In this document: positions 12,707-27,638 of the stretch, piece after piece | How positions within the stretch are numbered: position 1 is the first letter of the stretch | How the letters are laid out: every line of letters begins with the position of its first letter | Virus record (IMG/VR): IMGVR_UViG_3300042350_004191 | Span: 146,587-210,586 of that record | Direction: 5' to 3' (one strand) | Length of the DNA stretch: 64,000 bases | The notes under the pieces: model-generated | The model's database searches: none | What the model was told of the DNA's origin: nothing | Seen by the model: the letters and a program-made list of their open reading frames with translations, nothing else | Position numbers and translations under genes: made by a program

Positions 12707-13504
12707 ATGGATTTTATTAGAAACCCAAGCAATCCAGATATATGTGAATTGCCTAAAGTCTTACCTGATTTTTCTAAGTTTCCAGGTATTACCTCAAATT
12801 TAAATAACTTAAGCGCAAGTATAGAACCTTGGCTTTGCGAAATATTAAAGATTGCAGGAGATGAAAGTAAAGACCCTGTATTAAGACCGGGTAATGAACC
12901 GGATTACAGTCCGTTCTTTGATTCATTAACTGGAATGAAGGGAGTTGGAGATCCTAGAGTTGATTTAGGATTTGTCATGACAAAAACTTTGGAAAAATAT
13001 TTGCCACTATTAGATGTTAAATTGAAAGTTCTCCAAGAGGGTTGTCAAATTATAGAAGAAACCTTGTGCGATAGTGACGGAAAACCTGTATATAAATTAA
13101 AGAGTGACTGTGATTATGGCGAGGAAATAACATTTGATAGCGTTGCACAGTTTACTCAAAATATTTGGGAAGAAGAAACAACTAAAGCAGCCAATTCTTT
13201 TGCTGATTTTATTAAAAGAACATATGTAGACAAAAACTGGAGCGTAGAGCTTTATGCTATGGGTGATGGTAATCTACTAAAAATTGCTAGAGGACAAAGT
13301 ATACCGATCTTTTATGTGAGAGCATCATCAGGTAATCAGATAAAGTTTCACAAATATTATTTTGATGCTAGAGAAAAAGTATCTAAAGCTCTCAATATTA
13401 AATTGAATATAAAAGATTATAATTTGTTTAACAACGTTAACAATTTTCAAGAAAATACACAATTAATGCAAGTTTTAAGTGGCCCTTATTGGCCTGAGAA
13501 CTAA
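12707..13504 (+). CDS. Hypothetical protein
   Basis: 265-aa ORF converging on the baseplate module. Confidence 0.65.
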   Translation: MDFIRNPSNPDICELPKVLPDFSKFPGITSNLNNLSASIEPWLCEILKIAGDESKDPVLRPGNEPDYSPFFDSLTGMKGVGDPRVDLGFVMTKTLEKYLPLLDVKLKVLQEGCQIIEETLCDSDGKPVYKLKSDCDYGEEITFDSVAQFTQNIWEEETTKAANSFADFIKRTYVDKNWSVELYAMGDGNLLKIARGQSIPIFYVRASSGNQIKFHKYYFDAREKVSKALNIKLNIKDYNLFNNVNNFQENTQLMQVLSGPYWPEN

Positions 13505-16500
13505 CATTTTGTATCATCGACTATAATATCAATATTACCATCTGGTAAGCGTTTAAATCTGATATTGCTGCTTTGTAAACGTGTATTTGTAAAACCGGGT
13601 ACTTTATCTCCGATTCCGAAGGAATTCATTTTGTTATAATTGAAACGGCGACCACCAGAACCACCACCCCAACCACCAAATCCACCGCAACCAGCCAATG
13701 TTTTAGGACCACCATCAGGCCCCTGACCATTGCTTCTTGCTTTGGTTGGAATAGGTCCCGGTTCTACCGCAGAATTCCTTACACCCTGAACATCATCATA
13801 ATAATTCCCCTTTGGTTGAGTGTAATCATGATGGTGAGGTTTTGGATCTTCTAATTGATTATGATGCCAGTTCCAGATCCAGCCCCAAGAAACACCCGGT
13901 CCTGCTGCATTACAACAAAAACCCAAATACAATCCAGTAGGCACTGGTTCAATTACTGTATTGATATAAATTGTATTATAAATTTGCATAACAGCTTTAA
14001 CAATGTTTGTGAGGTTTAGCATAGCACCCGGCATTGCATAGTGTGTTAAAGCTGTCCTTACAGTATTTAAAATATCATTAGTCTGTGCAGGGCCAGTTGC
14101 CCAAGTTGTAAAAGGTATTCTTTGATCTGGTGAACTTCCTTGGTCTGATTGGGTTCGTTGTCCAACTGTATTTAAAAACGGCACAGACAACTCTCCATCC
14201 AATCTCATCCCACCAACAACACCTACGTTTCCGGTTGCACTAAATCCTTTGCAAACCATAGTGGGTGAATTTATTTCCACACCACCTTTATTAGTCCTAT
14301 CATTTGCGTCTATGGTAACTACTCTACCTTTTAAAGTAGTATGATTTTTTGATCCGAAAACCATTTCACCGTCTGAAGCTAAAAGTTCAACAGAACCACA
14401 ATTTAATTTTAATCTTCCTTTAGTATTTAATTCTATGCCAGCAGCACCAGCAACTATTTGTACAGAATTTCCGCCACGCAACATAAGATTACCGGGTAAA
14501 TTGATCGGTGGGGTATAAACAACGTTTTTTATTTCAGCAGATTTATGCCTTTGTGCAATGGTTTGTCCATCATTTGATTTTGTTTGTGTACCAACAGAAA
14601 CTGACTTATTAACAGTTTCTGCATAACATGGCGCATCGTTCATTCCTCCGGGTAATCCAGCAGAAATCACAACATCTTTTGATGCTGTAACTGTAAAACT
14701 TCCACCATTTCCTAACTGTTGTTCTGCATCAGCAATTTCTTTTTGTTTACTTGATAACTTTTTAGCCGCTTCTTTATTTGCATTTTCTATGGGTTTTTGT
14801 GGTGAAGGTATTTCGCCTTTATCACAATCAGGATTACCACATTTACCTAAGACATGCCCCGGTACAACCGAAGTAAATGGAACTAATATTAATCCCAATA
14901 AAAATTGGAAAACGTCTATAGCATACGAAAAATAAGGTGGTAATAAATTTCTTAAAAAGTTAAATGCTCTTTTTGCAAAACTTGATGCTCTGTCCACAGC
15001 ATATGATGTGGAACATAAAGGACACGGAACTTTTTCTCCGCTTTTTGCTGTATTTTTTATCTGTTCTACTTTTTCTTTTTGAACAGTTTCGGTTATAGTT
15101 TTTAATTTTTCTATAGCAGCTATTTCTTTATCCGTCATTCTACCAGCATTTATAAAAATATCTGACTCAACATCTGTATGAGATGTTGTGCCTATTCTTG
15201 CATTATAAGAGCCTCCTAATGATGTAAAAGCATCTGCTCTAGATTGAATATTTAAAGTATCTTGAGCTACCAATGACGTACCAGCACCATGAACCATTAA
15301 ACCAGATCCTCTAGCCAACACTTCAAAAGAACTTGTATCTGTTATTAAATTTCCATCTTTTAATTTTGTATCGGTCATTGACATTTTAACTGGGCCTGAT
15401 GCAAAAACGTTACCAACTCTAGCTGAATCTACATCAAGACCAATAACCGAATCAGAACCTGTTTGTATCATTTTTTTCATTGTTTCGGGTTCCAATGAAT
15501 TTGCAAAATATATAGGTTTTTGAATGTCACCAGCTAAAAAGAATACAAATACTTTTGCACCAGGAAATGGTATCGATATCATTCCTGATGCTTGATCACC
15601 AGCAAGACCAGGATCCGTTATCGGAGCATGAAAATTCGGGTTTGGAGAAGTTTGTGATCCTCCTCTAGCAGCAGCATAACCTGTTTTACCCTCTAATACA
15701 TCACCCTTCCCTGCTGCTATTAAATCTTCAGCGGCAGATGCACCGGGTGGCACAGTACCATATTTTGCAAGCTGTGCTTTGACATCTTCAGCACTTTTAC
15801 CTATCGTAGATTCTCTCCCTAAAACTTCAAAATTTACATTACTTACAGTATTATTAACGTTATACGTACTTCGATCAACATACATGTCTATTGTAGATCC
15901 TTGATTTGAATTTCCGTGTACGTCTGAAACTATATATACATAATTTGTTCTAGTATCTCGAATCACAGTTCCTACTGGTAAAAATTTATTATTTTGTGGA
16001 ACTGCAATGATGCCTGGTGTTAGATTTTGTCCTTGAGAAGAATATCCTTTAGAAGTCCAAGAATCTGTTGTTTCATCGCCTACTGTTGTATATTGAAATA
16101 CTTTGTCAGCAACAAAACTTCCTTGAACTTCTGGAGATTCTGTTGTTGTTGCGTCTTTTACTTCCAGACTTCCTTCGGTTGCTGTACTATGTGGATTTAC
16201 TGTTGTTCCAGCAACACTTTCGGATGGTTGCGTTATATCACCTCCATAATTCGGATCGAATTTGCCGTGTAAAATCTCAAATCGTCTACCATCGGGTAAT
16301 TCAAATGTAGCTCTATCTCCTACTTCTCCATTTTTAAATGTCATAGAAGAATTGTCTACCCATCTAGCTCCATTACTAAGAGTTAATGCTGCCTGTCTAT
16401 TACCAAAAGCAAAATCCCATCCACTGTGAGTACGTGTTCCCCCGTCCCTAGATGCATAAAAAGTTCCACCTGATGTAGTGGTTCCAGATGAAAGAGGGCT

Positions 16501-16962
16501 ACCATCTACTTGTACATATTGGTCTAAATCAGTTCTTTCAAAAAATCCTCTACCAACTTGTTTAATATCATAATGGCCTATTTTATTACGGGGTGATCCT
16601 ATTTTTCCTTGTATATAAGCACCTTTTTGTGGATCTGTTACAGGAAAAGTTCTACCAGCATATGTGTCAGTTATACCTGTATTTGGATTATATGTCGCAG
16701 AAGTACCTCCACCAAATATAGGACTAGCACATTCAGCCCAAGGTAAAACAGTTTTTAATTCTTCTACTAATTCAGGAGTTAATGAACCAGAATCATGAAT
16801 ATGTTTGAAATTTTTGTTACTTAAATCTTTATTCCAACCAGCATGTAAAGTATTTGTTAAATAAGGAATCCATATTTGTACACGGCCTCTGAATTCTGGA
16901 TCTTTATTATTAACAACAATTCCTAAATGATTACCATAAATTGGTTCTTTTGAGAGACTCAT
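13501..16962 (-). CDS. gp5: Baseplate central spike (gp5/VgrG-like) with inserted M23-peptidase-like and 3D-like domains
   Basis: OB-fold halves GIVVNNKDPEFRGRVQIWIP...LPWAE and IPFPGAKVFVFFLAGDIQKPIY; RTHSGWD (HxxxD); GIIAVP...VGT...SDVHG...TIDMYV; C-terminal beta-helix-like repeats. Confidence 0.85.
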   Translation of the reverse strand: MSLSKEPIYGNHLGIVVNNKDPEFRGRVQIWIPYLTNTLHAGWNKDLSNKNFKHIHDSGSLTPELVEELKTVLPWAECASPIFGGGTSATYNPNTGITDTYAGRTFPVTDPQKGAYIQGKIGSPRNKIGHYDIKQVGRGFFERTDLDQYVQVDGSPLSSGTTTSGGTFYASRDGGTRTHSGWDFAFGNRQAALTLSNGARWVDNSSMTFKNGEVGDRATFELPDGRRFEILHGKFDPNYGGDITQPSESVAGTTVNPHSTATEGSLEVKDATTTESPEVQGSFVADKVFQYTTVGDETTDSWTSKGYSSQGQNLTPGIIAVPQNNKFLPVGTVIRDTRTNYVYIVSDVHGNSNQGSTIDMYVDRSTYNVNNTVSNVNFEVLGRESTIGKSAEDVKAQLAKYGTVPPGASAAEDLIAAGKGDVLEGKTGYAAARGGSQTSPNPNFHAPITDPGLAGDQASGMISIPFPGAKVFVFFLAGDIQKPIYFANSLEPETMKKMIQTGSDSVIGLDVDSARVGNVFASGPVKMSMTDTKLKDGNLITDTSSFEVLARGSGLMVHGAGTSLVAQDTLNIQSRADAFTSLGGSYNARIGTTSHTDVESDIFINAGRMTDKEIAAIEKLKTITETVQKEKVEQIKNTAKSGEKVPCPLCSTSYAVDRASSFAKRAFNFLRNLLPPYFSYAIDVFQFLLGLILVPFTSVVPGHVLGKCGNPDCDKGEIPSPQKPIENANKEAAKKLSSKQKEIADAEQQLGNGGSFTVTASKDVVISAGLPGGMNDAPCYAETVNKSVSVGTQTKSNDGQTIAQRHKSAEIKNVVYTPPINLPGNLMLRGGNSVQIVAGAAGIELNTKGRLKLNCGSVELLASDGEMVFGSKNHTTLKGRVVTIDANDRTNKGGVEINSPTMVCKGFSATGNVGVVGGMRLDGELSVPFLNTVGQRTQSDQGSSPDQRIPFTTWATGPAQTNDILNTVRTALTHYAMPGAMLNLTNIVKAVMQIYNTIYINTVIEPVPTGLYLGFCCNAAGPGVSWGWIWNWHHNQLEDPKPHHHDYTQPKGNYYDDVQGVRNSAVEPGPIPTKARSNGQGPDGGPKTLAGCGGFGGWGGGSGGRRFNYNKMNSFGIGDKVPGFTNTRLQSSNIRFKRLPDGNIDIIVDDTKC

Positions 16963-16966
16963 AATA

Positions 16967-18673
16967 TTATGTTCCAGTTGTATTGGAATCTAATCCAAAA
17001 TTATTTGTAGGTGTACCAAAATCACTCGGAGAACCAGCTAATGTTTTTGCGACATTATAAACACCTTCATTTATATAATTTTTACCTTTAACTAAATCTC
17101 TACCCATATTATCCAACGATCTTTGAACATTACCTCTAAATTCTGTTAAAAATTCTGGCATTACTACATTTCTGGAGGGGGAATTTGGGTCGAATAATTG
17201 TACTTGTCCAGTTATTCCATATTTTCTAAATACCGCTGCTAAAGGATATAAAACAGGTGCTTGTGAACCAAACTGGTTTAAAAGACCGCCCATAACATCG
17301 CCTTTTAGATAATAAGCCATGTATGTATATCCATACTCCGATAAAACAGAACCCAAATAACCTAAAGGATCATTTCCTACACTGTTAACAATATTCATTA
17401 TATTTTGTACTTCTTCAGGCAAGTAAGATGTCAAACTTCCGACTGGATCTGATAAAAATTCAGTTATTTCTGGGGCAATACCAAATTCTTCCAAAATGTC
17501 TGATATTTTAAGAGAACTTGAAAACCATTGCGTAAACATAGTTAAATCTCCAGCGAAAATAGATATAATATCCAAAATGAAACATATAATTTCCAAAGGT
17601 ATAATTCTATCCAGTAAAGTTAATAACCATTGCATAATAACACCAGCAATTGAATCTAGTGCAGCAACAAATTCTTTCACTAATTTTAATGCTCCTTGAT
17701 AAATTTCATTTATCATTTGAGCTATGTATGCCACCACTCCTGTTATATAGTTAATAGCATATTGAATAGAACCTAATACACCAGCAGGAAGTGCTAAATA
17801 TGCTTTTCCTTTTAAAACATTTATATATTTTTCTAATTCTTCTGTAAATTTTGGATGAATTTTATTTAATGCTTGTTCTAGTAAAGACGGAACTTGTTTT
17901 TCAGAACCAGTCATTGGATTGTTAGGTAAATTATCAGTACTAGAAACAAGAGTGTTTCCTATTGCTCCTATGTCTTCGAAAAATTTATTTTTATATGCTG
18001 GTGTTTTTTTAAAAATAGCTTGTAAGGTTGGATTATAATATCCTTTAGTGATAGCATTACCTCTATACCACATGTACATTAACATGTTACCTTCTATTGA
18101 TACTGGCTGATCTTTTAAATTTCGATTTACACTACTTTGAATTGTTTTACCCGCTGCTGCTGCACCATTTAACAAAAGATAAACCCATGCTGACAATAAA
18201 TTATAATTCGTACCAGTTAATGATGATGCTAATACACAAAGATCGTTTAATGTCAATCCCGCCGCTCTACCTACAGTATCATAATCTATAGATATTATTT
18301 CTCCCGTAGTACCTGTTTTGGTTTCAAATTGTGTTCTTGTTCCTTGATTTAAAGATTTAGCAGTTTCGGGTGTAACTCCCCTAGGAGCATCTGGATCTTC
18401 AGGACCCGGCGCAGACCCCACTGCCAATCTACCACCACCAGATACTGCATCAAAGTCATCTTGTGAGATCAATTCATTAGACCAGTCCATAGGAGATTCA
18501 AAACCACCGCTTGAACTAGATCCTGATGTATCTACAGTAGGCCCTGTTGAGGCCGAAGTTTGGGTTATTCCACGACCATATTGTGATCGATCCCCTGATG
18601 TAACAATAGGACCTCCTTGCGAAGTTACATCTTCAGCAGTAGTTGGTAATGGAATTATTTTATTATCGCCCAT
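16967..18673 (-). CDS. Putative virion structural protein with hydrophobic helical C-terminal half
   Basis: 568 aa inside the tail module, TATAAATA late-promoter box at 18681-18688. Confidence 0.6.
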   Translation of the reverse strand: MGDNKIIPLPTTAEDVTSQGGPIVTSGDRSQYGRGITQTSASTGPTVDTSGSSSSGGFESPMDWSNELISQDDFDAVSGGGRLAVGSAPGPEDPDAPRGVTPETAKSLNQGTRTQFETKTGTTGEIISIDYDTVGRAAGLTLNDLCVLASSLTGTNYNLLSAWVYLLLNGAAAAGKTIQSSVNRNLKDQPVSIEGNMLMYMWYRGNAITKGYYNPTLQAIFKKTPAYKNKFFEDIGAIGNTLVSSTDNLPNNPMTGSEKQVPSLLEQALNKIHPKFTEELEKYINVLKGKAYLALPAGVLGSIQYAINYITGVVAYIAQMINEIYQGALKLVKEFVAALDSIAGVIMQWLLTLLDRIIPLEIICFILDIISIFAGDLTMFTQWFSSSLKISDILEEFGIAPEITEFLSDPVGSLTSYLPEEVQNIMNIVNSVGNDPLGYLGSVLSEYGYTYMAYYLKGDVMGGLLNQFGSQAPVLYPLAAVFRKYGITGQVQLFDPNSPSRNVVMPEFLTEFRGNVQRSLDNMGRDLVKGKNYINEGVYNVAKTLAGSPSDFGTPTNNFGLDSNTTGT

Positions 18674-18702: not shown

Positions 18703-19014
18703 TTACCACTTACCAACAGGACACTTTTCAGCTTTCAAATAAGTTTTAACAGACAAATAACAACCACATTTTTGACATCTTTGTGCTTCAGCAGAAAAAA
18801 ATTCACAACCTTGACAAATTGATAATCTTCTATTAGCCTCTGCTGGATCTATTCTTAAAGCATTTCCTTGAGCAACGCTTGCTGCATTTCTAACAACGCT
18901 TTGAGCAGCATTAGCAGCCATTCTACCTAAAGAAGGCATCTGTGGCTTATTGGAAGACTGTAATTGTCTTAATCTCGTCTGTTCTAATCTTTGTTTTAAA
19001 TAATCAGGATTCAT
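18703..19014 (-). CDS. Small Cys-rich zinc-binding protein
   Basis: CQGC...CQKCGC...CPVGKW. Confidence 0.7.
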   Translation of the reverse strand: MNPDYLKQRLEQTRLRQLQSSNKPQMPSLGRMAANAAQSVVRNAASVAQGNALRIDPAEANRRLSICQGCEFFSAEAQRCQKCGCYLSVKTYLKAEKCPVGKW

Positions 19015-19017
19015 AAA

Positions 19018-20643
19018 TTACCAATTTTTATCGTCTAAAACAGACCAATGGTTATGTAAACCATCGATTTTATTTGCATAAACGTCTGTAATGTATTTAC
19101 TACTATCGAAATAATGTACAACTTTATTAATGAGCCATTGTCCCAAAAACTTATCATCAAATGCATTTTTATCGGATGAGTCTGATCTGTCGATAAACAA
19201 AAATGTACCGGGTTGTCTTAGCGTCAATCCTTCTGTTTGAAAATATAATGCTTGATTTAAAAATATTGCATCTTTTAACATTTTTACCATCATCATGTCA
19301 GGTGGACCTTGTGTGTAAAATGCATTTTCTACACTCAAACCTTCCAATTTAGTTTTGTTTATATTTAACCAAATCTGATTTGGTCCATTTGTATTGTTCA
19401 AGAAAGAATACAATCCTTTTTTTCCTAATGTCTCTAAATTTTCAAATATTTTTTCGGCTTTATTTTCTTCAAAATGAATACTGTATGTTCCCGTATTAAA
19501 ATCCATTGTATGTGTTGGTCTATTAATTAAACGCATATCATCCACAGGAGCCATAGCTGCAAATTTATAGTTTTTCATCACAGATGTTCTTCCAGAAAAA
19601 ATATTTAAAATCTTTTCATTATTATCATCAAATAAAGCAGCCCTAGCAATATAGGCTAATGTTTGTGGTTCCAGTCCGTCTTGAAGAGTCATTCTTTCAA
19701 TTTGTTTGGCTTTTGAAAAAATATCACTTAATGATATTAATGACCATTTTTTATTATATCTATCTAATCTTAAAAACACTGGATCATTATCGAACCCTTT
19801 AGCATAAGACATCATAAATTTTATGTCATCTATTGTTTTTGCGTTTGCTGGTGACGTATAAAACACAAGATTATTAGGGTCGTTAGTATTTGTTATATTC
19901 CAATTATCCTCATCAATATTATCAAAAGGTAAATTTGGGTTGTCAATAGAACCGCCGCTATCAAAACCTACTTTTAATTCACTAGTTTGTTCTTTTCCTA
20001 GAGTAAAATCGTTACATGCGGCAGTTTTTATAATAGATTTAATTGATTCGTTAGGATTCCACTTTCTTTCTATGTCTGTAAGATAAGAAACAGAAACATT
20101 CCTCTGCTTTGCAATATCGTTTGCTGGTCCATGAGTAGACGTTGACCATGGAATATTTCTTTCTGATAAAATTTGATATCTTTCATCTATAAAATAAATT
20201 TTTTTAAGTTTGGCTGTAGCTGAATTAGTTTCAATATCTTCAACATCATATACAACAAAATCATAATCCATTGTCCATGTTTCAGGTTTTATTAAAGGAT
20301 TTCCATTAGATAATGTTTCTATTTTGATATTAATACGGTTTCTACCATCGTGTCTAAAAACAAAAAAAGCATCTGTGCTTGTAGTATTTTGATTTTTCTC
20401 GGTATCTGATACTGTTTTAGCTGTGGTAGATCTTTCTATTACTTCAAAATCGTTTTTTAATATAATCCAACCTTTTGTCCACCAATTTGTTAAACTTTCT
20501 TCTATAACCAAACTATCTACAATCTTGAACGGAAGGCTTAAAGGTTTTTTTGTTACAGTATTGAAAAAAACAATTCTTATGAGATAATATTGGTCTTTTA
20601 TTAAGACAATATCACCTTTATTTTTATTTAATTCTCCAGCCAT
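19018..20643 (-). CDS. Baseplate hub protein (gp27/gpD-like)
   Basis: C-terminal GLTLRQPG...GQWLINKVVHYF..YIT pattern of hub proteins; position near gp5. Confidence 0.65.
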   Translation of the reverse strand: MAGELNKNKGDIVLIKDQYYLIRIVFFNTVTKKPLSLPFKIVDSLVIEESLTNWWTKGWIILKNDFEVIERSTTAKTVSDTEKNQNTTSTDAFFVFRHDGRNRINIKIETLSNGNPLIKPETWTMDYDFVVYDVEDIETNSATAKLKKIYFIDERYQILSERNIPWSTSTHGPANDIAKQRNVSVSYLTDIERKWNPNESIKSIIKTAACNDFTLGKEQTSELKVGFDSGGSIDNPNLPFDNIDEDNWNITNTNDPNNLVFYTSPANAKTIDDIKFMMSYAKGFDNDPVFLRLDRYNKKWSLISLSDIFSKAKQIERMTLQDGLEPQTLAYIARAALFDDNNEKILNIFSGRTSVMKNYKFAAMAPVDDMRLINRPTHTMDFNTGTYSIHFEENKAEKIFENLETLGKKGLYSFLNNTNGPNQIWLNINKTKLEGLSVENAFYTQGPPDMMMVKMLKDAIFLNQALYFQTEGLTLRQPGTFLFIDRSDSSDKNAFDDKFLGQWLINKVVHYFDSSKYITDVYANKIDGLHNHWSVLDDKNW

Positions 20644-20646
20644 ATT

Positions 20647-21252
20647 TTATTTGCATACATTTTCATTCACATTAGACTCCAAGCTAACATTGATTTGATT
20701 ATAACTGAAAGATGCTGTGCTTGTAATTTCGACACCATCTTGATGTGAATAATTAATTCCACCCAAAGAAGTTATAAATGCTCCTTCATATTCAAATCTT
20801 ATAAGTTTTCTATTATATTCATCTAATGTTATAATTGTTAATGTCGTAGTATAATCAGGAAATTGATTTTCTAATTCTAACTCTGGATTTGGTGGGACTT
20901 CGGCTGATCTTAAAATTTCACTAGAAGAATTTCTAGAATCATTAAAAAGATTTAACCAATTCCAAAGAATATAATAATTATGATACCCGTTATCTATAAA
21001 AAATCTAATATCCATTGATGGATAATCTGGTCTTGAGAAAGAACTGGTTTTATAAGTTTGTCCACCGTATCCTAAACTTATAGACGGAATACTAATATCA
21101 GGTACTGACATGTTGTATATACTCAATTGAACTTTATCGTCATTAAAATCAGATTTTAATTTAGGATCATAAAGATTGTCTAATGCTTTGGGTAAAGCAA
21201 AAAGAAATATAAATTTATCGTTTCTAGACTTGTTTAAAATAGATTGGTTCAT
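20647..21252 (-). CDS. Tail completion / tube terminator (gp3-like, tube fold)
   Basis: SVPDISIP...YPSMDIRFFID..Y.N...LWNW, LITLD...FITSLG.I.Y. Confidence 0.65.
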   Translation of the reverse strand: MNQSILNKSRNDKFIFLFALPKALDNLYDPKLKSDFNDDKVQLSIYNMSVPDISIPSISLGYGGQTYKTSSFSRPDYPSMDIRFFIDNGYHNYYILWNWLNLFNDSRNSSSEILRSAEVPPNPELELENQFPDYTTTLTIITLDEYNRKLIRFEYEGAFITSLGGINYSHQDGVEITSTASFSYNQINVSLESNVNENVCK

Positions 21253-21255
21253 ATA

Positions 21256-23091
21256 TTAAAATAAAATAACAGGAGAATTGTTTTCTTCATTTAAAGAATT
21301 TTCCGTTTTTTCTCCATCTTTATTACTTATATTAGGTTTACCGTCCCAAAGGTTACTAATCCAATTAAATAGTTCCATTTGATCATTTGTTGTTGGTCCA
21401 ATTTCATCTTGTCCTATAAAGGATAATGGTCTATAATTGTTTTCTGTTTTTTTATAAAGACTACTTTTACCTAAAAATAAAGAACTCTTTTTTATTAGCT
21501 CAGAATTGTTTACAAATGGTTTAATTTTTAGTGGTCTACCTTGATCATCAACATCATGAATATAAAAATATTTTTCTACTATAGAAGGATCTAAAATGAA
21601 AAGACACCAAATTAAAGCAAAAACTCTGTCATCAAAATCATCATTTGTTCTTTTACTATATGTATAGTTTGGGTGTTGAATAAAGTTATTAATTTCTAAA
21701 AGTGTATCTAAATCATAAAACTCAACAGCATTTAGAGAATTTATCCAATATCTAAGATTTGCAGTTCCTCTATATTTTGTATTAGTATGACTATGTATTC
21801 CTAGTCTATTATCATTTTTATAAAATTTGCTCATACCTTCGCTATAGTATGATACAATATTTTCATAATTATGAATTTTACCTAAAACATCTAAAACCTG
21901 TTGACCACTATTATTGTTTTCAATTAACACAGGAGGTCTTCCCCAATCGTCTAAAATACCCATTAAACGTGTACCGAAATGATATGGACTAATTTCATTA
22001 TTAGCATAAATGGCTGCTTGTTTTATGTTGGTCAAATCCGAAACGTTCATAATCTGGACAACAGTATTTGATCTACCTATACCTTCACCTACGTCTACGC
22101 CCACTACATAAAAATCATTTTCTTTAGGAAAATCGAATATTTTATATGAACCTTCGTCTAAAATTAAAACAGGCTCTTTACATTTAGCTTTTAATTCTTC
22201 TAAAAGTTTTGTATCAATAACAGCTTTACCTTTTGTAAAAAATTGATTTCCAAATTCTTGTTCAAAATCTTGTTCAGAACCTAATTGAGCTATAGTTGAG
22301 CGTTTCCATTCTTCATCTCTACCGGGCACATCCCACCAATCAACTCTTTCTAAATTCCAATCATTATTTTCTTTTAATGATTCTTGATATATTTCGTAAA
22401 ATTTATTATCTGTCCCGTTAGGTGTACTAATAACAATTATTTGTGAGTTTTTAGAAGATGAAATAATAGGTATTGCAGACTTCCACAATTCTTTCATAAC
22501 TTCATTTGGACAATGTGCCATCTCATCGATAAGAAGAAGATTGCTAGTAGATCCGCGAGGTCCAGCACTTGATGTTGTGCTGACTTGTATAGCAGAACCA
22601 TTACCTAAAGCAAATCCGTTTTTTCTCCAAGACTTAACTGGTGGTTTTAAATATAAAGGCAATTCTTCAAATGCCATTTTAATACGTGCAAAAATTTCTT
22701 CAGCAGTATCGGCTTTGTTTGCAACTATAGTAATTCTTTTGTCATCAAAAAAACAAGTAAGCCATAATGCATAAATTGTTATAGTTGTAGTTTTTCCACT
22801 CTGACGGCTTGATAATATAATGTTAAATCTATTAGATTTATAAGATTTTAATAATCTTTTTTGGTATTTATAAAGTTCAATTTTTCTTCTACCCTCATCA
22901 AGAGTTAATATAAAAAAATGATTTTCAGCAAAATGGAGAATACTTTTTCTGCATAAACGCAGATCGTCTTCCATTTCTTTTGTCCACTTTAATGTAGCAT
23001 TTCCTCTTAAAAGGTTTTCATTACCTTTATAAAATGCTGCATCTACCAAAATGTCATCTGGATCTACAGGTTTTACATTTGTTTTTGGCAT
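21256..23091 (-). CDS. gp17: Terminase large subunit
   Basis: SRQSGKTT Walker A, LLIDE Walker B, ISTPNG, FEQEF, GVDVGEG, DDRVFAL. Confidence 0.97.
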   Translation of the reverse strand: MPKTNVKPVDPDDILVDAAFYKGNENLLRGNATLKWTKEMEDDLRLCRKSILHFAENHFFILTLDEGRRKIELYKYQKRLLKSYKSNRFNIILSSRQSGKTTTITIYALWLTCFFDDKRITIVANKADTAEEIFARIKMAFEELPLYLKPPVKSWRKNGFALGNGSAIQVSTTSSAGPRGSTSNLLLIDEMAHCPNEVMKELWKSAIPIISSSKNSQIIVISTPNGTDNKFYEIYQESLKENNDWNLERVDWWDVPGRDEEWKRSTIAQLGSEQDFEQEFGNQFFTKGKAVIDTKLLEELKAKCKEPVLILDEGSYKIFDFPKENDFYVVGVDVGEGIGRSNTVVQIMNVSDLTNIKQAAIYANNEISPYHFGTRLMGILDDWGRPPVLIENNNSGQQVLDVLGKIHNYENIVSYYSEGMSKFYKNDNRLGIHSHTNTKYRGTANLRYWINSLNAVEFYDLDTLLEINNFIQHPNYTYSKRTNDDFDDRVFALIWCLFILDPSIVEKYFYIHDVDDQGRPLKIKPFVNNSELIKKSSLFLGKSSLYKKTENNYRPLSFIGQDEIGPTTNDQMELFNWISNLWDGKPNISNKDGEKTENSLNEENNSPVILF

Positions 23092-23096
23092 GATTT

Positions 23097-23450
23097 TTAT
23101 TTATTAATTTGTTTTGATATTTCAGCCAGAACTACCCCAACGTAATTGGGTCTTAAATATTTTATAAGCGTTTTTGATTTTATTTTCTCAAAGGGGTCTA
23201 AAACACTATTATATAAACATATTAACCACCACAAATTCATATTACCATAAATTCTATGAGATATGGAGTACCATGTATCAGTGTAGTCTGATATATATTC
23301 TCCTTCCAATTCACTGTTATTTGACGGGAAAATTGATATATTTTTTAATAAATTAAAAAAACGAAACCCTTGGTCATTTTCGTATATATTAAAAAAATTT
23401 TCGTAACTAAAAGAACTACTATTAATTTCTGGTATATCTGTTTTTCTCAT
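23097..23450 (-). CDS. Baseplate wedge protein (gp53-like, LysM-like)
   Basis: DTWYSISHRIYGNMNLWWLICLYNSVLDPF. Confidence 0.75.
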   Translation of the reverse strand: MRKTDIPEINSSSFSYENFFNIYENDQGFRFFNLLKNISIFPSNNSELEGEYISDYTDTWYSISHRIYGNMNLWWLICLYNSVLDPFEKIKSKTLIKYLRPNYVGVVLAEISKQINK

Positions 23451-23464
23451 TTTAATTATTAACC

Positions 23465-24523
23465 TTATTCAGGTCCACCTCTTGTATTTGGTCCACCCCC
23501 AAAAGGATTAGTTCCAACTACTTCCACTTTAGCACCACCAACAGCCCCTTGGAAAATATTGGTACTTTGTGGTAACATTTCCTGTAATGTTATATTAACA
23601 TCATATGCCTCTGGTACTAGTACGGTTTTACCGGGTATTATATCATCGGTGATTTGTCTAACAGTTCCTATATTATTAATTTTTAATTCTCTCATATATG
23701 CTATAGGCATATATACACCATTCATACCTTCACAAGATACTGTATATACTGATGGTGGAACATATGTAACAAGGGATGTTCTGTTTTTTAGATTTTGATA
23801 AGTCAATAGTATGGTAAAGTAAAAATTATCTATTGTAGATTGAATATTAAAAGTATTATATAAAGGAAATCTTATATTAAGTGTCATACAATTGGTAGTA
23901 GAAAAGGTATAGATGGGATCTACTTCTATACCTGGTGTTAGAAAACCAGCCGCACCACCTATTGCTCCACCAAAAAATTGAGAAAGTTTAGAATTAGGTG
24001 CTCCGGTACTACTGCTACTACTTCTCGGTGAAAACCCCTTATTATCATTCCAAGTATTTGTTATACTTCTCAAATTACTACCGCTATTTAACAACCATGG
24101 TATTCTGTATTTGAATGGACTGTTATTTTGTTCTATAACATACAATTGAGCATATGGCTCAGACATAGCTGCTTCAAAAGATTCGTTTTGTGCAGTGTCG
24201 ATAACATTTCTAAAAGTATTAATAACATTAGATATTGTTGCAGCTATTCCTCTCATGGCTAAAGTTTTTTCTTCTAAAATCAAGGACGGAACTTCATTTA
24301 GTACGGAATCATCTTGTGCTTCTGAAGAATTTCTCCATTTAAAACCATTTCTAATGTCTACCATGTTACCATTAGATCTTAGTCTAATTCTTTTTAAAAA
24401 ATTAGTTACTGCTGTATCACCTGATCCAGCAAGTGTTTCTGAATATTTTTCTAAAGTAAACAAATTATTTTGTTGACTTACAGCACTTTCAAACAAGGAA
24501 TAATCTTTATCAAAATCTGCCAT
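23465..24523 (-). CDS. Baseplate tail-tube cap (gp48-like)
   Basis: Tube-like beta pattern (LNIRFPL, P.VYTV, I..LKI, Y.V.ITL.E); position next to gp53. Confidence 0.45.
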   Translation of the reverse strand: MADFDKDYSLFESAVSQQNNLFTLEKYSETLAGSGDTAVTNFLKRIRLRSNGNMVDIRNGFKWRNSSEAQDDSVLNEVPSLILEEKTLAMRGIAATISNVINTFRNVIDTAQNESFEAAMSEPYAQLYVIEQNNSPFKYRIPWLLNSGSNLRSITNTWNDNKGFSPRSSSSSTGAPNSKLSQFFGGAIGGAAGFLTPGIEVDPIYTFSTTNCMTLNIRFPLYNTFNIQSTIDNFYFTILLTYQNLKNRTSLVTYVPPSVYTVSCEGMNGVYMPIAYMRELKINNIGTVRQITDDIIPGKTVLVPEAYDVNITLQEMLPQSTNIFQGAVGGAKVEVVGTNPFGGGPNTRGGPE

Positions 24524-27500
24524 ATGTATTACTCCTTAGAAACTCTGTTCTTGATAAATATATTTCGTCTCTGCCACCGCTTATTTTTACTTTTTCTGAA
24601 GCATTTTCCATACTACCGTTATTATTATTTATAATAATAGGTTCTGTTGGGGTGTTATCTATTTCTGGATTTCTTCTTTGATTTAACATATCGATCTCTT
24701 TAGACATTAATAGTCTTTCCATTTTTTTAGATAAATTTTCTACACTATTGGTTAAATTAATAAATGTTTTGTCTACAGCATCTCCTTTTTTAGATGCAAA
24801 AATAGTGTCATCAGAAGACAGTTGAATAGCATTACCACTTCTGTCTAATATTATTTTTCCGTCTTTTGAATCAAATCTTTTTTCTATAAATGAAGATTTT
24901 GAAGGACCTTCAAAAGCAGTGTCTTCTAATAACATATTTGAAAGTTTTTTATCATCGGTATAAAAATTAGCTTTTTCTGGTTCAATAACTTCTTTGTTTT
25001 TTTTATCCATCAATTCTTGAAGCTCTTGTCTCAACAAGTTTAATTTTTGTCCTTTGGTTCTGTCCCTAGATTGACTGATTTTTTCAATTTTTTCTTCTAT
25101 CAATGAAATTTGTTTGTCTAATTCAGTCTCTGGCAATACCCCTAAATCTTCAGCAGTCGTAACTTGTTTACCTTCCTTCAGTTCTTCATATCTTTTGAGT
25201 TTGTAATTTAATGCTTTTTGAGATTCTAATATATTCTCTCTTTGTCTTTCTAACATTTCTATTTTTCTATCATCTCTTGATATAAAATTTTTGTTTTTTT
25301 CTTCTTCAATAGAAGCTTCTAATTCTTTTCGGTTGGAGATTAATCCTTTTGCATTATCTTTTAATTCAGTCTCATCTTTTTCATTGTATTCGGTTGGAAG
25401 ATTTCTTATAACATTCTTTTCAACTCCAGACATTTTTGGTTGTTTAATCTCAGATATTGGAGCATTATTTTCTACAAGTTCTTTTGTCTTTTCATCGTAT
25501 GTATATCCAAACATACTAGCAAACCAAGATTTTATACCGAATCCTTCTGGGAAAAAATTTACTAAATTTTTATACAAGTTCTTTTTTAAATTGTCTGCTA
25601 ATTTAGTAAATGAAAATTTTGTAGTAGTTACGCCTGTTTTTGAATCGGTTGTGGTTTCAAATGCATCTAATATTGATAAAAATGTTCCTGCTACAGAACC
25701 GAAAAATGGTAATTCATTGATCAATTCTAAACCCTCACGTATATTGCCTGTAAACAAAGAATATAGACCTTCACCAGCTTTGATTAAGGTTCCTACCAAA
25801 TAACTTTCTCTGAGATATTTGTAAAAAGAACCAAACCAGTTTCCCATAATAGAAGCTTTACCAGTAGATGTATCTGAACCTTGTTGGTAATCTAAAACGC
25901 TGTTTAATATATCTATACCTATAGCCAACGTTGTACCTACACCGGGAACAAACGCAGCAATGCCTGATACTATATCCAAAACACCGCCTAAGATATCGTT
26001 TTGTTGAAACCTTCCCCATGCTAAACCAAAACTTAAAAGAGAACCAATAACAGGTATAAATTTTAATTTACTTCCTATTTTAGCTACCCAACCTACGGCT
26101 TTCATTAGCATCGCTGTTATGCTCAATCCTGTCTCGGCCTTTTGTTCTTTTTCTTCACCGCCCTTTAAGTCGATAAAGGTATTTAAAAGGCTTAAACCTA
26201 TAGACAGAGCAGTTCCTACACCGGGAACCAAACCAGTGACTCCAGCGGCTATGTCTATCAAACCTTGCATATATTCACCTTCACGAAACCTTGCCCAAGC
26301 CTGACCAAAGCTAATAACTGTGCCTATTAATGGAATGGCTTTTAATGCGGTCAAAGATACACCTTTCAAAAGTAAACCAGCACCTCTAGCTAAAAGACCT
26401 TTTAAATTACGTCCCACAGTAGATCCAGCCACTTTTCCACCAACTTCAGCACTTTCACCTATGATATTATCAAACACACCAGAAAACATTTGAGTAGCAT
26501 ATGTTGCCAGCTTTTCACTAATACTACCAAAGAATGTACCAACGGTCTTAAAAGCATTCCCAAAGGTCATTTGGAGTCCACCCATAGTAAAAAATTTACT
26601 CATGGCATTCACTACTCCTTGAAATTTATCAAAAGTTTCAGCAGCCTTATCGCCAAATTTCTCACTAATGTAATTTTTAATTTCAGGCCAATAAAAGGAT
26701 GTAATAGCTCCTATGCCACCTATAGCCGCCATAGCACCTCCAATCAAACCAGCAACGCCACCTAGACCATTTAATAAACCACCAAACAAACCACCAAACA
26801 AACCACCACCTTGTTGTATTGTAACATTCGATGTTTCTTCGGATTTTTCTTTTAAAATTTTATCTACTAATTTAGATAAAAAATCACTTGTCTGAGTAGA
26901 AAAAGTTATAATTGTTTCTGTTGGTTTGTTTTCAAATAATTTTTGTTCTTCTGAAGTTGTTTGTGTGTTATTTGTTGGATTTTCGTTATTGGCTTTAATG
27001 AATTCTAGCGTGTTATTTTTTTGTAAATCTAAAACATTTACTAAATTACCAATCAGATTATTGTTGTTTTCGTTGTTTAAATTGAAAATATTTTTAATAT
27101 CAAAAATAAAACTTTTAAGAGTATCACTTAAATCGAATTTTTGATTTTTTAAAATATTTTTGTTATTGAGTGTTTCAACATCTGTCGTTTCTTCCGTATT
27201 TTTTTTCTGATAAGCTTCTTTTATTTTAGAAAAAATATCTGAAAATATATTTTGATAGTCGGTTAAGAAATTAAAATCTGTTTGAACATTTGTATCTTTT
27301 ACGGGTTGTTTAGGCTGTTCAACTAATCTCGGAGACTCTTTGGATGATTTAGCTTGAATGTCGGTTACTTCTTTGTCTTTGGTTTGAACTTTTTGAATTA
27401 ATGTGTTCAGCTTTTCATATATCTCAGTAGCCCTTTCAGAAGAATTTTCAACATTATCTGTTAAAGTTTTCCATTTTTTGACCAACTTTTCTAATATATT

Positions 27501-27638
27501 CCGTTTAAAATCTCTTCGAATTAACTGTAAATCTTGATCGTTGACAAATATCTTTACAAGAACATCTAAAGGATTTTCCTTTAATCCCTTTTCTGTAAAT
27601 TCTTTTATAAAGCTTTCTATGTCAGGATTCGCTACCAT
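24510..27638 (-). CDS. Tape measure-like protein (gp29-like)
   Basis: 1042 aa, mostly helical/coiled coil, Gly-rich hydrophobic segments, internal repeats, located between hub chaperones and tube cap. Confidence 0.7.
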   Translation of the reverse strand: MVANPDIESFIKEFTEKGLKENPLDVLVKIFVNDQDLQLIRRDFKRNILEKLVKKWKTLTDNVENSSERATEIYEKLNTLIQKVQTKDKEVTDIQAKSSKESPRLVEQPKQPVKDTNVQTDFNFLTDYQNIFSDIFSKIKEAYQKKNTEETTDVETLNNKNILKNQKFDLSDTLKSFIFDIKNIFNLNNENNNNLIGNLVNVLDLQKNNTLEFIKANNENPTNNTQTTSEEQKLFENKPTETIITFSTQTSDFLSKLVDKILKEKSEETSNVTIQQGGGLFGGLFGGLLNGLGGVAGLIGGAMAAIGGIGAITSFYWPEIKNYISEKFGDKAAETFDKFQGVVNAMSKFFTMGGLQMTFGNAFKTVGTFFGSISEKLATYATQMFSGVFDNIIGESAEVGGKVAGSTVGRNLKGLLARGAGLLLKGVSLTALKAIPLIGTVISFGQAWARFREGEYMQGLIDIAAGVTGLVPGVGTALSIGLSLLNTFIDLKGGEEKEQKAETGLSITAMLMKAVGWVAKIGSKLKFIPVIGSLLSFGLAWGRFQQNDILGGVLDIVSGIAAFVPGVGTTLAIGIDILNSVLDYQQGSDTSTGKASIMGNWFGSFYKYLRESYLVGTLIKAGEGLYSLFTGNIREGLELINELPFFGSVAGTFLSILDAFETTTDSKTGVTTTKFSFTKLADNLKKNLYKNLVNFFPEGFGIKSWFASMFGYTYDEKTKELVENNAPISEIKQPKMSGVEKNVIRNLPTEYNEKDETELKDNAKGLISNRKELEASIEEEKNKNFISRDDRKIEMLERQRENILESQKALNYKLKRYEELKEGKQVTTAEDLGVLPETELDKQISLIEEKIEKISQSRDRTKGQKLNLLRQELQELMDKKNKEVIEPEKANFYTDDKKLSNMLLEDTAFEGPSKSSFIEKRFDSKDGKIILDRSGNAIQLSSDDTIFASKKGDAVDKTFINLTNSVENLSKKMERLLMSKEIDMLNQRRNPEIDNTPTEPIIINNNNGSMENASEKVKISGGRDEIYLSRTEFLRSNTYGRF

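What the first reader, a model, noticed from the sequence alone, without database searches (positions are those of the whole stretch)
15490..16940. gp5-like spike with two different wall-hydrolase-like domains inserted inside its OB-fold
Seen: the OB-fold is split. GIVVNNKDP..GRVQIWIP..LPWAE is at the N-terminus and IPFPGAKVFVFFLAGDIQKPIYF about 370 aa later. The insert holds an M23-like segment (RTHSGWD plus distal EILHG, ~16250-16470) and a 3D/RlpA-like segment (GIIAVP..VGT..SDVHG..TIDMYV, ~15860-16060). Known: T4 gp5 carries one T4-lysozyme after the OB-fold. Inference: an endopeptidase plus a lytic transglycosylase displayed together on the puncturing device, suggesting an unusual host envelope.
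Basis: partly seen in the sequence, partly recalled or inferred. Interest (0 to 1): 0.6.

Follow-up and report, generated by a model that had tools for sequence, protein, structure and literature searches.

The report
Phage spike with swappable wall-cutting enzymes
The tail spike of an uncultured 210-kb phage carries two likely cell-wall-cutting enzymes inside a loop of its anchoring barrel, a loop where related phages swap enzymes, and one of the two is a rearranged version of a known peptidase that no family database lists.

Summary
Window 13501-16962 (-) encodes a 1153-aa gp5/VgrG-type central spike of an uncultured myovirus. Its Phage_base_V OB domain is split: profile positions 2-32 match aa 13-43 and positions 40-70 match aa ~454-486.

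The ~370-aa insert holds two folded modules.
- **Module 1 (aa 113-236).** AF2 pLDDT is 90. It keeps the M23/LytM inventory of His and Asp residues, but in permuted order. The C-terminal HxH strand of M23 sits first and reads H130-x-D132, followed by H179xxxD183 and then H232. No Pfam, NCBIfam or named PHROG model covers it. It occurs in 137 protein clusters, mostly tape-measure and internal virion proteins.

All 31 full-length relatives share the split barrel. They carry 4-5 alternative modules at the first position and 5 at the second, in 13 combinations. The loop is therefore an enzyme cassette site.

Pairs of a glycan-cutting enzyme and a peptidase are already known on baseplate hubs (cyanophage A-1(L) gp15, diffocin CD1368). 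Nothing supports an "unusual host envelope". No enzyme activity was tested.

The parts
13501..16962 (-). Central spike gene, 1153 aa (P0001)
   Evidence: ORF list and translation. PF04717 match above the cut-off. Lies in a tail gene cluster.
16702..16962 (-). N-terminal half of the OB fold (aa 1-87), covering strands 1-3 up to SPIFGGGTS. It has an extra ~38-aa loop between RVQIWIPY and LPWAEC.
   Evidence: Pfam profile positions 2-32 match aa 13-43. The block is nearly invariant in 19 aligned relatives.
16255..16626 (-). Module 1 (aa 113-236): a circularly permuted M23/LytM-like domain, a putative metallo-endopeptidase
16561..16581 (-). Motif IGHYDIK (H130, D132, K134). It is the counterpart of the C-terminal GPHLHF strand of M23, with the second His replaced by Asp.
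   Evidence: H26 is invariant in the 39-sequence alignment A2; D28 and K30 are nearly invariant there (at least 90%) and invariant in the 10-sequence A3. The motif aligns to LytM, 5kqb and MepM at GNTG..TG(P/A)HLH.
16408..16431 (-). Motif THSGWDFA (H179xxxD183), the counterpart of the M23 HxxxD zinc ligands
   Evidence: Aligns to LytM HYGVDYA and MepM HRGVDFA. D is invariant.
16264..16281 (-). Motif FEILHG (H232), the counterpart of the M23 catalytic His (YMH in MepM)
   Evidence: H128 and G129 are invariant. They align collinearly with MepM once the profile is permuted.
16120..16254 (-). Linker between the modules (aa 237-281). It contains the junction motif VAGT.VNP...AT......VKD, conserved across relatives.
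   Evidence: The motif is conserved in most of the 32 aligned family members whichever modules flank it. Its start overlaps the low-pLDDT first 17 residues of the module 2 model.
15808..16119 (-). Module 2 (aa 282-385): a double-psi beta-barrel of the MltA/YuiC/RlpA type, a putative lytic transglycosylase
15877..15927 (-). SDVHGN (D347) and TIDMYV (D359), proposed counterparts of YuiC D151/D162 and MltA D297/D308
   Evidence: Both Asp are invariant in alignment A4. They are 12 residues apart here and 11 in relatives, against 11 in YuiC and MltA.
15601..15807 (-). Helical tail and linker (aa 386-454) leading back to the OB fold
   Evidence: Helices at aa ~391-399 and ~410-416, then low pLDDT.
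15493..15600 (-). C-terminal half of the OB fold (aa 455-490), strands 4-5
   Evidence: Pfam profile positions 40-70. PGAKVFVFFL.GD.QKP.YFA is invariant. It aligns weakly to the VgrG1 OB fold.
13504..15492 (-). Conserved spike shaft and tip (aa 491-1153). It holds a Cys4 motif with a hydrophobic hairpin, a beta-helix-like repeat, and a tail rich in His and Gly.
   Evidence: 42-71% identical to the full-length relatives below 85% overall identity. Weak DUF2345 and VgrG1 beta-helix matches.

Best explanation
The gene encodes the trimeric central spike of a contractile-tailed phage. Its N-terminal OB barrel is the part that docks the spike under the tail tube and hub. The loop between strands 3 and 4 of that barrel has been opened, and two enzyme modules joined by a conserved linker have been inserted there. 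The barrel closes again behind them.

Module 1 is a zinc-type peptidoglycan endopeptidase descended from the M23/LytM fold by circular permutation. The proposed ligand and catalytic set is H179, D183, D132, H130 and H232. Module 2 is an MltA/YuiC-type lytic transglycosylase with D359 as the catalytic acid and D347 binding the sugar.

When the sheath contracts, the spike crosses the outer layers and carries three copies of each enzyme into the wall. The glycan-cutting and peptide-cutting activities then open the peptidoglycan locally for the tube. Each module is held at both ends, so it would act while still attached to the spike, and a single cut could not release it as the cut in T4 gp5 does.

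Related phages exchange the two modules independently, presumably to match the wall chemistry of their hosts.

Shown: the split OB fold, two folded modules, their fold relationships, the conserved residues, and module swapping among relatives. Inferred: metal binding, both enzyme activities, the trimer, and action in cis.
For: - **Spike identity.** PF04717 above its cut-off. Weak matches to VgrG1 (4mtk) and the A-1(L) central spike (8kea_D). Sheath, tube, TerL and a gp53-like protein lie nearby.
- **Split barrel.** Two Pfam stretches. Both halves are invariant in 31 relatives with 395-529 variable residues between them.
- **Module 1, structure and sequence.** Confident model, pLDDT 89.8 and pTM 0.84. 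Most of the best VIA rows are M23/LytM folds: LECT2 4.5, StM23 4.1, EnvC 3.9, LytM 3.7, plus Csd3, DipM, SpoIIQ and lysostaphin. All of them align model residues 40-134 to the N-terminal two thirds of M23. A profile search of the PDB returns M23 chains as six of seven hits, best E=0.024. HxGxDYA aligns to HYGVDYA, and a second stretch aligns GNIGPTSTGPHLD to GNTG..TGAHLH at the opposite end of M23.
- **Module 1, permutation.** Cutting the profile anywhere between columns 24 and 63 turns the two non-collinear MepM matches into one collinear alignment, MepM 310-395.
- **Module 1, supporting hits.** Three of 10 relatives hit Pfam M23, best E 0.0048. Relative P0124 hits peptidase and metallo-endopeptidase PHROGs.
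- **Module 1, conservation and context.** H130, D183 and H232 are invariant across 39 diverse sequences, and D132 is nearly so (at least 90% of them; invariant in the 10-sequence set). The module occurs in tape-measure proteins, in the Synechococcus phage P60 internal virion protein and in an S-TIM5 virion protein. These proteins are virion components, and tape-measure and internal virion proteins leave the virion at entry (general phage knowledge).
- **Module 2.** Double-psi beta-barrel matches. Hits to the assayed 'endoglucanase' domain of A-1(L) hub gp15 and to the MltA-like lobe of diffocin CD1368. Two conserved Asp with the YuiC/MltA spacing. Atlas features point to 3D-domain clusters at 0.93.
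- **Swapping.** 4-5 classes at the first position, 5 at the second, 13 combinations. Known lysin families occupy the same slots: GH24 in 7 of the 19 relatives scanned, M15_3 in 2, glucosaminidase in 1.
Against: - No activity, metal content or virion location was measured.
- For module 1 every single link to M23 is weak. Foldseek finds nothing in the PDB. VIA Z stays below 5, a range the tool itself calls unsafe, and RRM folds are interleaved with the M23 rows. HMMER E-values are 0.02-0.9. hhalign gives a probability of 3.5%. Permuting the profile gains only 1.7 bits.
- I could not read model coordinates, so I did not check that the five residues cluster in space.
- In one branch of the module 1 family the His of HxxxD sits one residue closer to the Asp.
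- For module 2 there is no Pfam 3D hit and no PDB sequence hit. Its first Asp is Pro here and Asn in most relatives. The fold is shared with non-catalytic expansins and protease inhibitors.
- The Asp mapping rests on motifs and spacing, not on a superposition.
- The whole OB fold plus insert was not folded, so closure of the barrel is inferred from the Pfam coordinates.
Confidence: 0.7

Rival explanations
1. Module 1 has the LytM fold but does not cut anything. Like EnvC, NlpD or SpoIIQ, it would bind peptidoglycan or regulate or position module 2.
For: EnvC, DipM, SpoIIQ and PrgK LytM domains score as well as the active enzymes in the fold search. The HxH motif is not intact, reading HxD.
Against: Degenerate LytM factors have lost their metal ligands (established knowledge). 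Here H130, D183 and H232 are invariant, D132 is nearly so, and a His lies 3-4 residues before D183 across the 39 diverse family members aligned. Asp is a competent zinc ligand. The module also stands at the C-terminal end of short proteins with no recognised partner domain.
Confidence: 0.12
2. Module 1 is unrelated to M23. It would be a separate small beta-sandwich, perhaps a metal-binding or carbohydrate-binding domain, and the shared short motifs would be convergent or chance.
Against: Independent methods all converge on M23: VIA fold ranking, HMMER against the PDB, Pfam on relatives, PHROG peptidase families, and the first row of the Atlas feature search. Three motifs match in register once the order is permuted, and they reproduce the complete M23 residue inventory.
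Confidence: 0.1
3. Module 2 is not a lytic transglycosylase. It would be either a non-hydrolytic expansin/RlpA-like binder that loosens or grips glycan strands, or a hydrolase for another polysaccharide, matching the 'endoglucanase' label given to the A-1(L) hub domain.
For: Expansins, kiwellin, a papain inhibitor and Cel45 endoglucanases score almost as high as MltA and YuiC. The first Asp of the 3D motif is missing. There is no Pfam 3D hit.
Against: The two Asp that bind the sugar and catalyse the reaction in YuiC and MltA are invariant, with the right spacing. Relatives carry GH24 lysozyme or glucosaminidase at the same position, which argues for a glycan-cleaving role in that slot. The matching domains of A-1(L) gp15 and diffocin CD1368 are, respectively, reported as lytic and assigned as a lytic transglycosylase.
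Confidence: 0.15

Closest known systems
Phage T4 gp5 (central spike with tail lysozyme)
   Same: It has an N-terminal OB fold of the same superfamily, a wall-degrading enzyme carried on the spike, and a C-terminal shaft. It also belongs to a contractile-tailed phage of the T4 terminase lineage (T4 anatomy from established knowledge).
   Different: T4 has one enzyme, a GH24 lysozyme, placed after a complete OB fold and freed by a cleavage. Here two enzymes of other families sit inside the loop between strands 3 and 4 of the OB fold and are tethered at both ends. The Pfam Gp5_OB and Gp5_C models are not matched.
Cyanophage A-1(L) baseplate hub gp15 (PDB 8kea_A)
   Different: There the enzymes are on the gp27-like hub, not on the spike, and are not inside an OB fold. 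The A-1(L) spike gp25 is a plain 270-aa protein.
Diffocin hub-hydrolase CD1368 (PDB 8v3w_H)
   Different: The lobes are appended to the C-terminus of the hub. The authors compare the peptidase lobe with Acd24020 and SagA and describe a catalytic triad; those comparators are NlpC/P60 enzymes by my own knowledge, so it is not M23-like. The target is Gram-positive.
M23/LytM metallopeptidases (LytM, MepM, lysostaphin; Pfam PF01551)
   Same: They share the same set of conserved residues, in motifs that align in register: HxxxD, a lone catalytic His, and a GxxGxSTGPH strand. Most of the best structural neighbours are M23 domains.
   Different: The order is circularly permuted, with the last M23 strand coming first. 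HxH reads HxD. This protein scores below every Pfam threshold. Fold scores are low.
YuiC / MltA '3D' lytic transglycosylases (Pfam PF06725)
   Different: The first Asp is Pro or Asn. There is no HMM match to PF06725, and identity is only 13-22%.

Membership tests
gp5/VgrG-type spike (Pfam PF04717 Phage_base_V) | HMM match above the curated cut-off | tested here: met
   27.9 bits against a cut-off of 23.8. All 19 aligned relatives match.
gp5/VgrG-type spike (Pfam PF04717 Phage_base_V) | A contiguous five-stranded OB barrel | tested here: not met
   Profile positions 2-32 lie at aa 13-43 and positions 40-70 at aa ~454-485, separated by about 370 inserted residues.
gp5/VgrG-type spike (Pfam PF04717 Phage_base_V) | A C-terminal beta-helical shaft | tested here: inconclusive
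   Only weak matches: DUF2345 at E 0.03-0.15 (aa ~825-859), and VgrG1 4mtk beta-helix repeats at domain E 27-35. The shaft was not folded.
gp5/VgrG-type spike (Pfam PF04717 Phage_base_V) | Encoded among contractile-tail and baseplate genes | tested here: met
   Tube at 20647-21252, gp53-like protein at 23097-23450, and sheath at 30763-33459, all on the same strand.
Peptidase M23 (PF01551) | HMM match above the curated cut-off (28.7 bits) | tested here: not met
   No hit for this protein or its fragments even at E<=10. Three of 10 relatives hit, best E 0.0048. A six-frame search of the whole phage genome finds no PF01551 match.
Peptidase M23 (PF01551) | The HxxxD zinc-ligand motif | tested here: met
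   H179-S-G-W-D183 aligns to LytM HYGVD and MepM HRGVD.
Peptidase M23 (PF01551) | A C-terminal HxH motif, in the order HxxxD, then H, then HxH | tested here: not met
   The counterpart is H130-Y-D132, and it lies before HxxxD. The profile matches to LytM, 5kqb and MepM are non-collinear and become collinear only after circular permutation.
Peptidase M23 (PF01551) | The M23 fold | tested here: inconclusive
Peptidase M23 (PF01551) | Zinc-dependent cleavage of peptidoglycan peptides | not testable with these tools
   Needs purified protein.
3D / MltA-type lytic transglycosylase (PF06725) | HMM match | tested here: not met
   No PF06725 hit at E<=10 for the module, and none at E<=0.1 in relatives P0006-P0008 and P0010. 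P0010 is nevertheless named a 3D-domain protein by JGI.
3D / MltA-type lytic transglycosylase (PF06725) | Double-psi beta-barrel fold | tested here: met
3D / MltA-type lytic transglycosylase (PF06725) | Three conserved Asp (YuiC D129, D151, D162) | tested here: not met
   The first position is P322 here and Asn in most relatives. D347 and D359 are invariant.
3D / MltA-type lytic transglycosylase (PF06725) | The catalytic Asp (YuiC D162 / MltA D308) is present | tested here: inconclusive
   D359 in TIDMY lies 12 residues after D347 (11 in relatives), against 11 in YuiC and MltA. The mapping is by motif, not by superposition.
3D / MltA-type lytic transglycosylase (PF06725) | Formation of 1,6-anhydro-MurNAc products | not testable with these tools
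   Needs an enzyme assay.

The most novel reading that the evidence does not exclude
Two linked claims.
1. The loop between strands 3 and 4 of the OB fold in this spike family is a dedicated two-slot cassette site. Phages exchange peptidoglycan hydrolases of at least eight unrelated sequence classes there, around a fixed linker. A shorter spike family with VanY inserts does the same.
2. Slot 1 here holds the founding example of an undescribed, circularly permuted branch of M23 metallopeptidases that uses HxD in place of HxH. That branch is widespread in virion proteins that take part in cell entry: myovirus spikes, siphovirus tape measures and podovirus internal virion proteins.
Probability: 0.55. 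Interest if true: 0.6.

Novelty: new variant of a known kind. Interest (0 to 1): 0.5.

Why it matters
Spike-borne and hub-borne lysins are known, so the principle is not new. Three things are.

- **Insertion site.** Large enzymes are tolerated in a surface loop of the OB barrel that docks the spike. This gives a natural template for engineering spikes or tailocins that carry chosen lysins.
- **Module swapping.** The family shows combinatorial exchange of lysin modules around a conserved junction. That makes it a tidy system for studying how phages match entry enzymes to host wall chemistry.
- **Unannotated domain.** A ~120-aa domain present in 137 protein clusters is invisible to Pfam, NCBIfam and the named PHROGs. 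It can now be read as a probable permuted M23 peptidase. That would annotate part of many tape-measure and internal virion proteins and add a rare case of circular permutation among wall hydrolases.

Tried and rejected
- **tblastn against 50,697 phage genomes.** No match for the whole spike or for module 2. No isolate carries a close relative of the whole spike or of module 2.
- **phmmer of the whole protein against PDB sequences.** Blank.
- **Word-based homologue searches for module 2.** Using a region of the long protein gave only 3 hits. Using the fragment alone gave none. A viral-contig scan returned only a near-identical copy. The module 2 fold therefore rests on a 7-sequence alignment.
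- **Profile of alignment A2 against the PDB.** It was swamped by the tape-measure parts of the longer members. I repeated it with short proteins only, alignment A3.
- **Profile of alignment A4 against the PDB.** No 3D or MltA hit by sequence.
- **Foldseek of module 1 against the PDB.** Nothing below E=0.29.
- **Collecting canonical M23 sequences from the phage's relatives.** Not possible for a virus record. I used E. coli MepM and phi29 gp13 from annotated records instead. gp13 gave only a marginal match to the HxH strand.
- **Pfam on the C-terminal 499 aa and on the weak 'peptidase' stretch of the neighbouring 1042-aa ORF.** Nothing.
- **Rejected explanation: assembly or fusion artefact.** The architecture recurs in 31 relatives from separate samples.
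- **Not used.** Read mapping, alternative genetic codes and complex prediction. The question did not need them.
Full report
**What is there.**
The reported interval lies inside a single minus-strand ORF, window 13501-16962, encoding 1153 aa. The window is the last 64 kb of a 210,586-bp IMG/VR virus record judged about 99% complete. GC content is about 30%.

On the same strand lie a tail tube gene (20647-21252), a large terminase (21256-23091), a gp53-like wedge protein (23097-23450) and a tail sheath (30763-33459). The terminase is at best 34% identical to those of phiM9-type phages, which are distant relatives of T4. No sequenced phage isolate has a protein resembling the spike. This is therefore the central spike gene of an uncultured myovirus.

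**The split OB fold is real.**
The only Pfam family above its threshold is Phage_base_V (27.9 bits, cut-off 23.8), and it matches in two pieces. Profile positions 2-32 fall at aa 13-43, and positions 40-70 fall at aa ~454-485. In the canonical domain the stretch 'W-a-r-v-s-p-aG' is followed directly by strands 4 and 5 (my reading of the Pfam consensus, from memory). Here SPIFGGGTS (aa 80-88) and GMISIPFPGAKVFVFF (from aa 460) are about 370 residues apart.

A word-based search found 44 relatives. Of these, 31 are full length (1153-1279 aa). They keep both half-barrels and the C-terminal 650 aa nearly invariant. The 395-529 residues between LPWAEC and GAKVFVFF are unalignable between subgroups. 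The split is a family trait, neither chance nor an assembly artefact.

**Module 1 (aa 113-236).**
Pfam, NCBIfam, PHROGs and a PDB sequence search are silent for this protein. An exhaustive HMMER search with aa 105-245 found 137 representative clusters, 89 of them at E<=1e-10. Most matches sit inside proteins of 1000-2700 aa. Two of these carry tape-measure Pfam domains, in one case next to a tail-lysozyme domain; a third carries lysozyme and SLT domains.

Matches among predicted viral structures include an uncultured tape-measure protein, the internal virion protein of Synechococcus phage P60 and a virion protein of cyanophage S-TIM5. An Atlas cluster pairs the module with an SLT domain. The module therefore travels in virion proteins of the kinds that take part in cell entry.

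H130, D183 and H232 are invariant across 39 diverse sequences; D132 and K134 are in at least 90% of them and are invariant in the 10-sequence set. A His lies 3-4 residues before D183; here it is H179. The AF2 model is confident, with pLDDT 89.8 and pTM 0.84.

Evidence on its relation to M23:
- Foldseek finds nothing in the PDB.
- A profile built from ten short family members returns M23 peptidases as six of its seven PDB hits, best E=0.024. The family's HxGxDYA aligns to LytM HYGVDYA. A second, weaker stretch aligns the family's N-terminal GNIGPTSTGPHLD to GNTG..TGAHLH at the C-terminal end of M23.
- E. coli MepM gives the same non-collinear pair of matches. Cutting the profile anywhere between columns 24 and 63 and rejoining it yields one collinear alignment over MepM 310-395. 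That alignment covers HRGVD, YMH and GNTGRSTGPHLH. The gain is small, 12.8 against 11.1 bits.
- Three of ten relatives touch Pfam M23, best E 0.0048. One relative hits peptidase and metallo-endopeptidase PHROGs. hhalign against MepM gives E=0.012.

Each line is weak. Together they point one way: a circularly permuted M23-like domain whose residue inventory equals that of M23, with the last zinc-binding His replaced by Asp. I put this at roughly 0.75. The third motif and the permutation were missed.

**Module 2 (aa ~282-385).**
Only seven sequences could be aligned. The model still has a well-defined core, with most 10-residue blocks at pLDDT 74-94 (one at 67) and a mean of 73.6 because the flanks are disordered.

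In YuiC and MltA the three Asp are D129/D151/D162 and D261/D297/D308, and the last is catalytic. Here the first is P322, or Asn in most relatives. SDVHG (D347) and TIDMY (D359) are invariant. They are spaced 12 residues apart here and 11 in relatives, against 11 in YuiC and MltA. There is no HMM match to Pfam 3D.

Fold membership is therefore met and strict family membership is not. A lytic transglycosylase is the most likely function.

**The loop is a cassette site.**
I split the insert at a junction motif, VAGT.VNP...AT......VKD, which is conserved across the family, and clustered each half. This gives 4-5 classes at the first position and 5 at the second, in 13 combinations among 32 proteins.

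Slots filled by known families include Peptidase_M15_3 at position 1, and GH24 lysozyme or glucosaminidase at position 2. The pairing found here, permuted M23 with a 3D-like barrel, occurs only in this protein and its two closest relatives. The same M23-like module is paired with GH24 in two others. A separate family of 700-850-aa spikes also has a split OB fold, in three cases with a VanY domain.

**Mechanism and comparison.**
The most economical reading is a trimeric spike that carries three endopeptidase and three transglycosylase lobes around its OB collar into the wall after sheath contraction. The lobes would cut both bond types of peptidoglycan while remaining tethered at both ends.

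T4 gp5 differs in having one GH24 domain after an intact OB fold, released by cleavage (established knowledge). A-1(L) gp15 and diffocin CD1368 show the same two-enzyme logic, but on the hub protein. Such pairs and many alternative modules are ordinary in this setting, so nothing here indicates an unusual host envelope.

**Limits.**
- Both structure-prediction jobs went to the two modules, so the complete OB fold with its insert and the trimer were not modelled.
- Model coordinates could not be read, so the clustering of the proposed active-site residues is untested.
- No permutation-aware structural alignment was available.
- All functional statements are inferences.

Noticed in passing
window 14815-15024 (aa 647-716 of the spike): Four invariant Cys (CPLC at aa 647-650, CGNPDC at aa 708-713) bracket a conserved, very hydrophobic ~26-residue stretch (aa 677-702). 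This looks like a zinc knuckle holding a membrane-active hairpin inside the spike shaft.
   Followed up: no
window 13504-13869 (aa 1032-1153): The spike ends with a conserved His-rich motif (WHHN....P.PHHHD), a Gly-rich run (GCGGFGGWGGGSGG) and an invariant last Cys. This may be a metal-binding tip. Pfam finds nothing.
   Followed up: partly
window 16120-16254 (aa 237-281): The linker between the two modules carries a motif (VAGT.VNP...AT......VKD) that is conserved across the family whatever modules flank it. It could be a structural return to the scaffold or a recombination joint.
   Followed up: partly
P0038, P0042, P0044 (700-850-aa proteins): A second, shorter spike family also has its OB fold split, with half 1 at aa ~8-83 and half 2 after aa ~610. 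It carries a VanY (PF02557) domain. Insertion into this loop is therefore not confined to one family.
   Followed up: partly
P0007-P0009 and P0018-P0033 (excluding P0032), slot 1 (alignment A1 columns ~190-330): The commonest slot 1 module (18 of 32 relatives) has a conserved GGRC..TA motif and a later G..GH motif. That pattern is reminiscent of Cys/His amidases or peptidases. No Pfam family is recorded for it in the precomputed lists, and none turned up in the eight of these 18 that I scanned.
   Followed up: no
BFVD hits L0CQF1 and H6WFX6: The permuted M23-like module occurs in the internal virion protein of Synechococcus podophage P60 and in a virion protein of cyanophage S-TIM5. Cultured marine cyanophages therefore carry it and could be used for assays.
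   Followed up: no
window 18703-19014 (-): A 103-aa Cys-rich ORF two genes upstream of the spike matches DUF6171 and phrog_13558, both of unknown function. Its position suggests a small baseplate or spike-tip partner.
   Followed up: no
window 24510-27638 (-): A 1042-aa ORF in the tail cluster has weak PHROG matches labelled peptidase and endolysin at aa 514-578. Pfam finds nothing on that stretch. It may be a second virion-borne lysin or the tape measure.
   Followed up: partly
window 16967-18673 and 19018-20643 (-): The 568-aa and 541-aa ORFs next to the spike have no Pfam or PHROG match. One of them may be the gp27-like hub.
   Followed up: no
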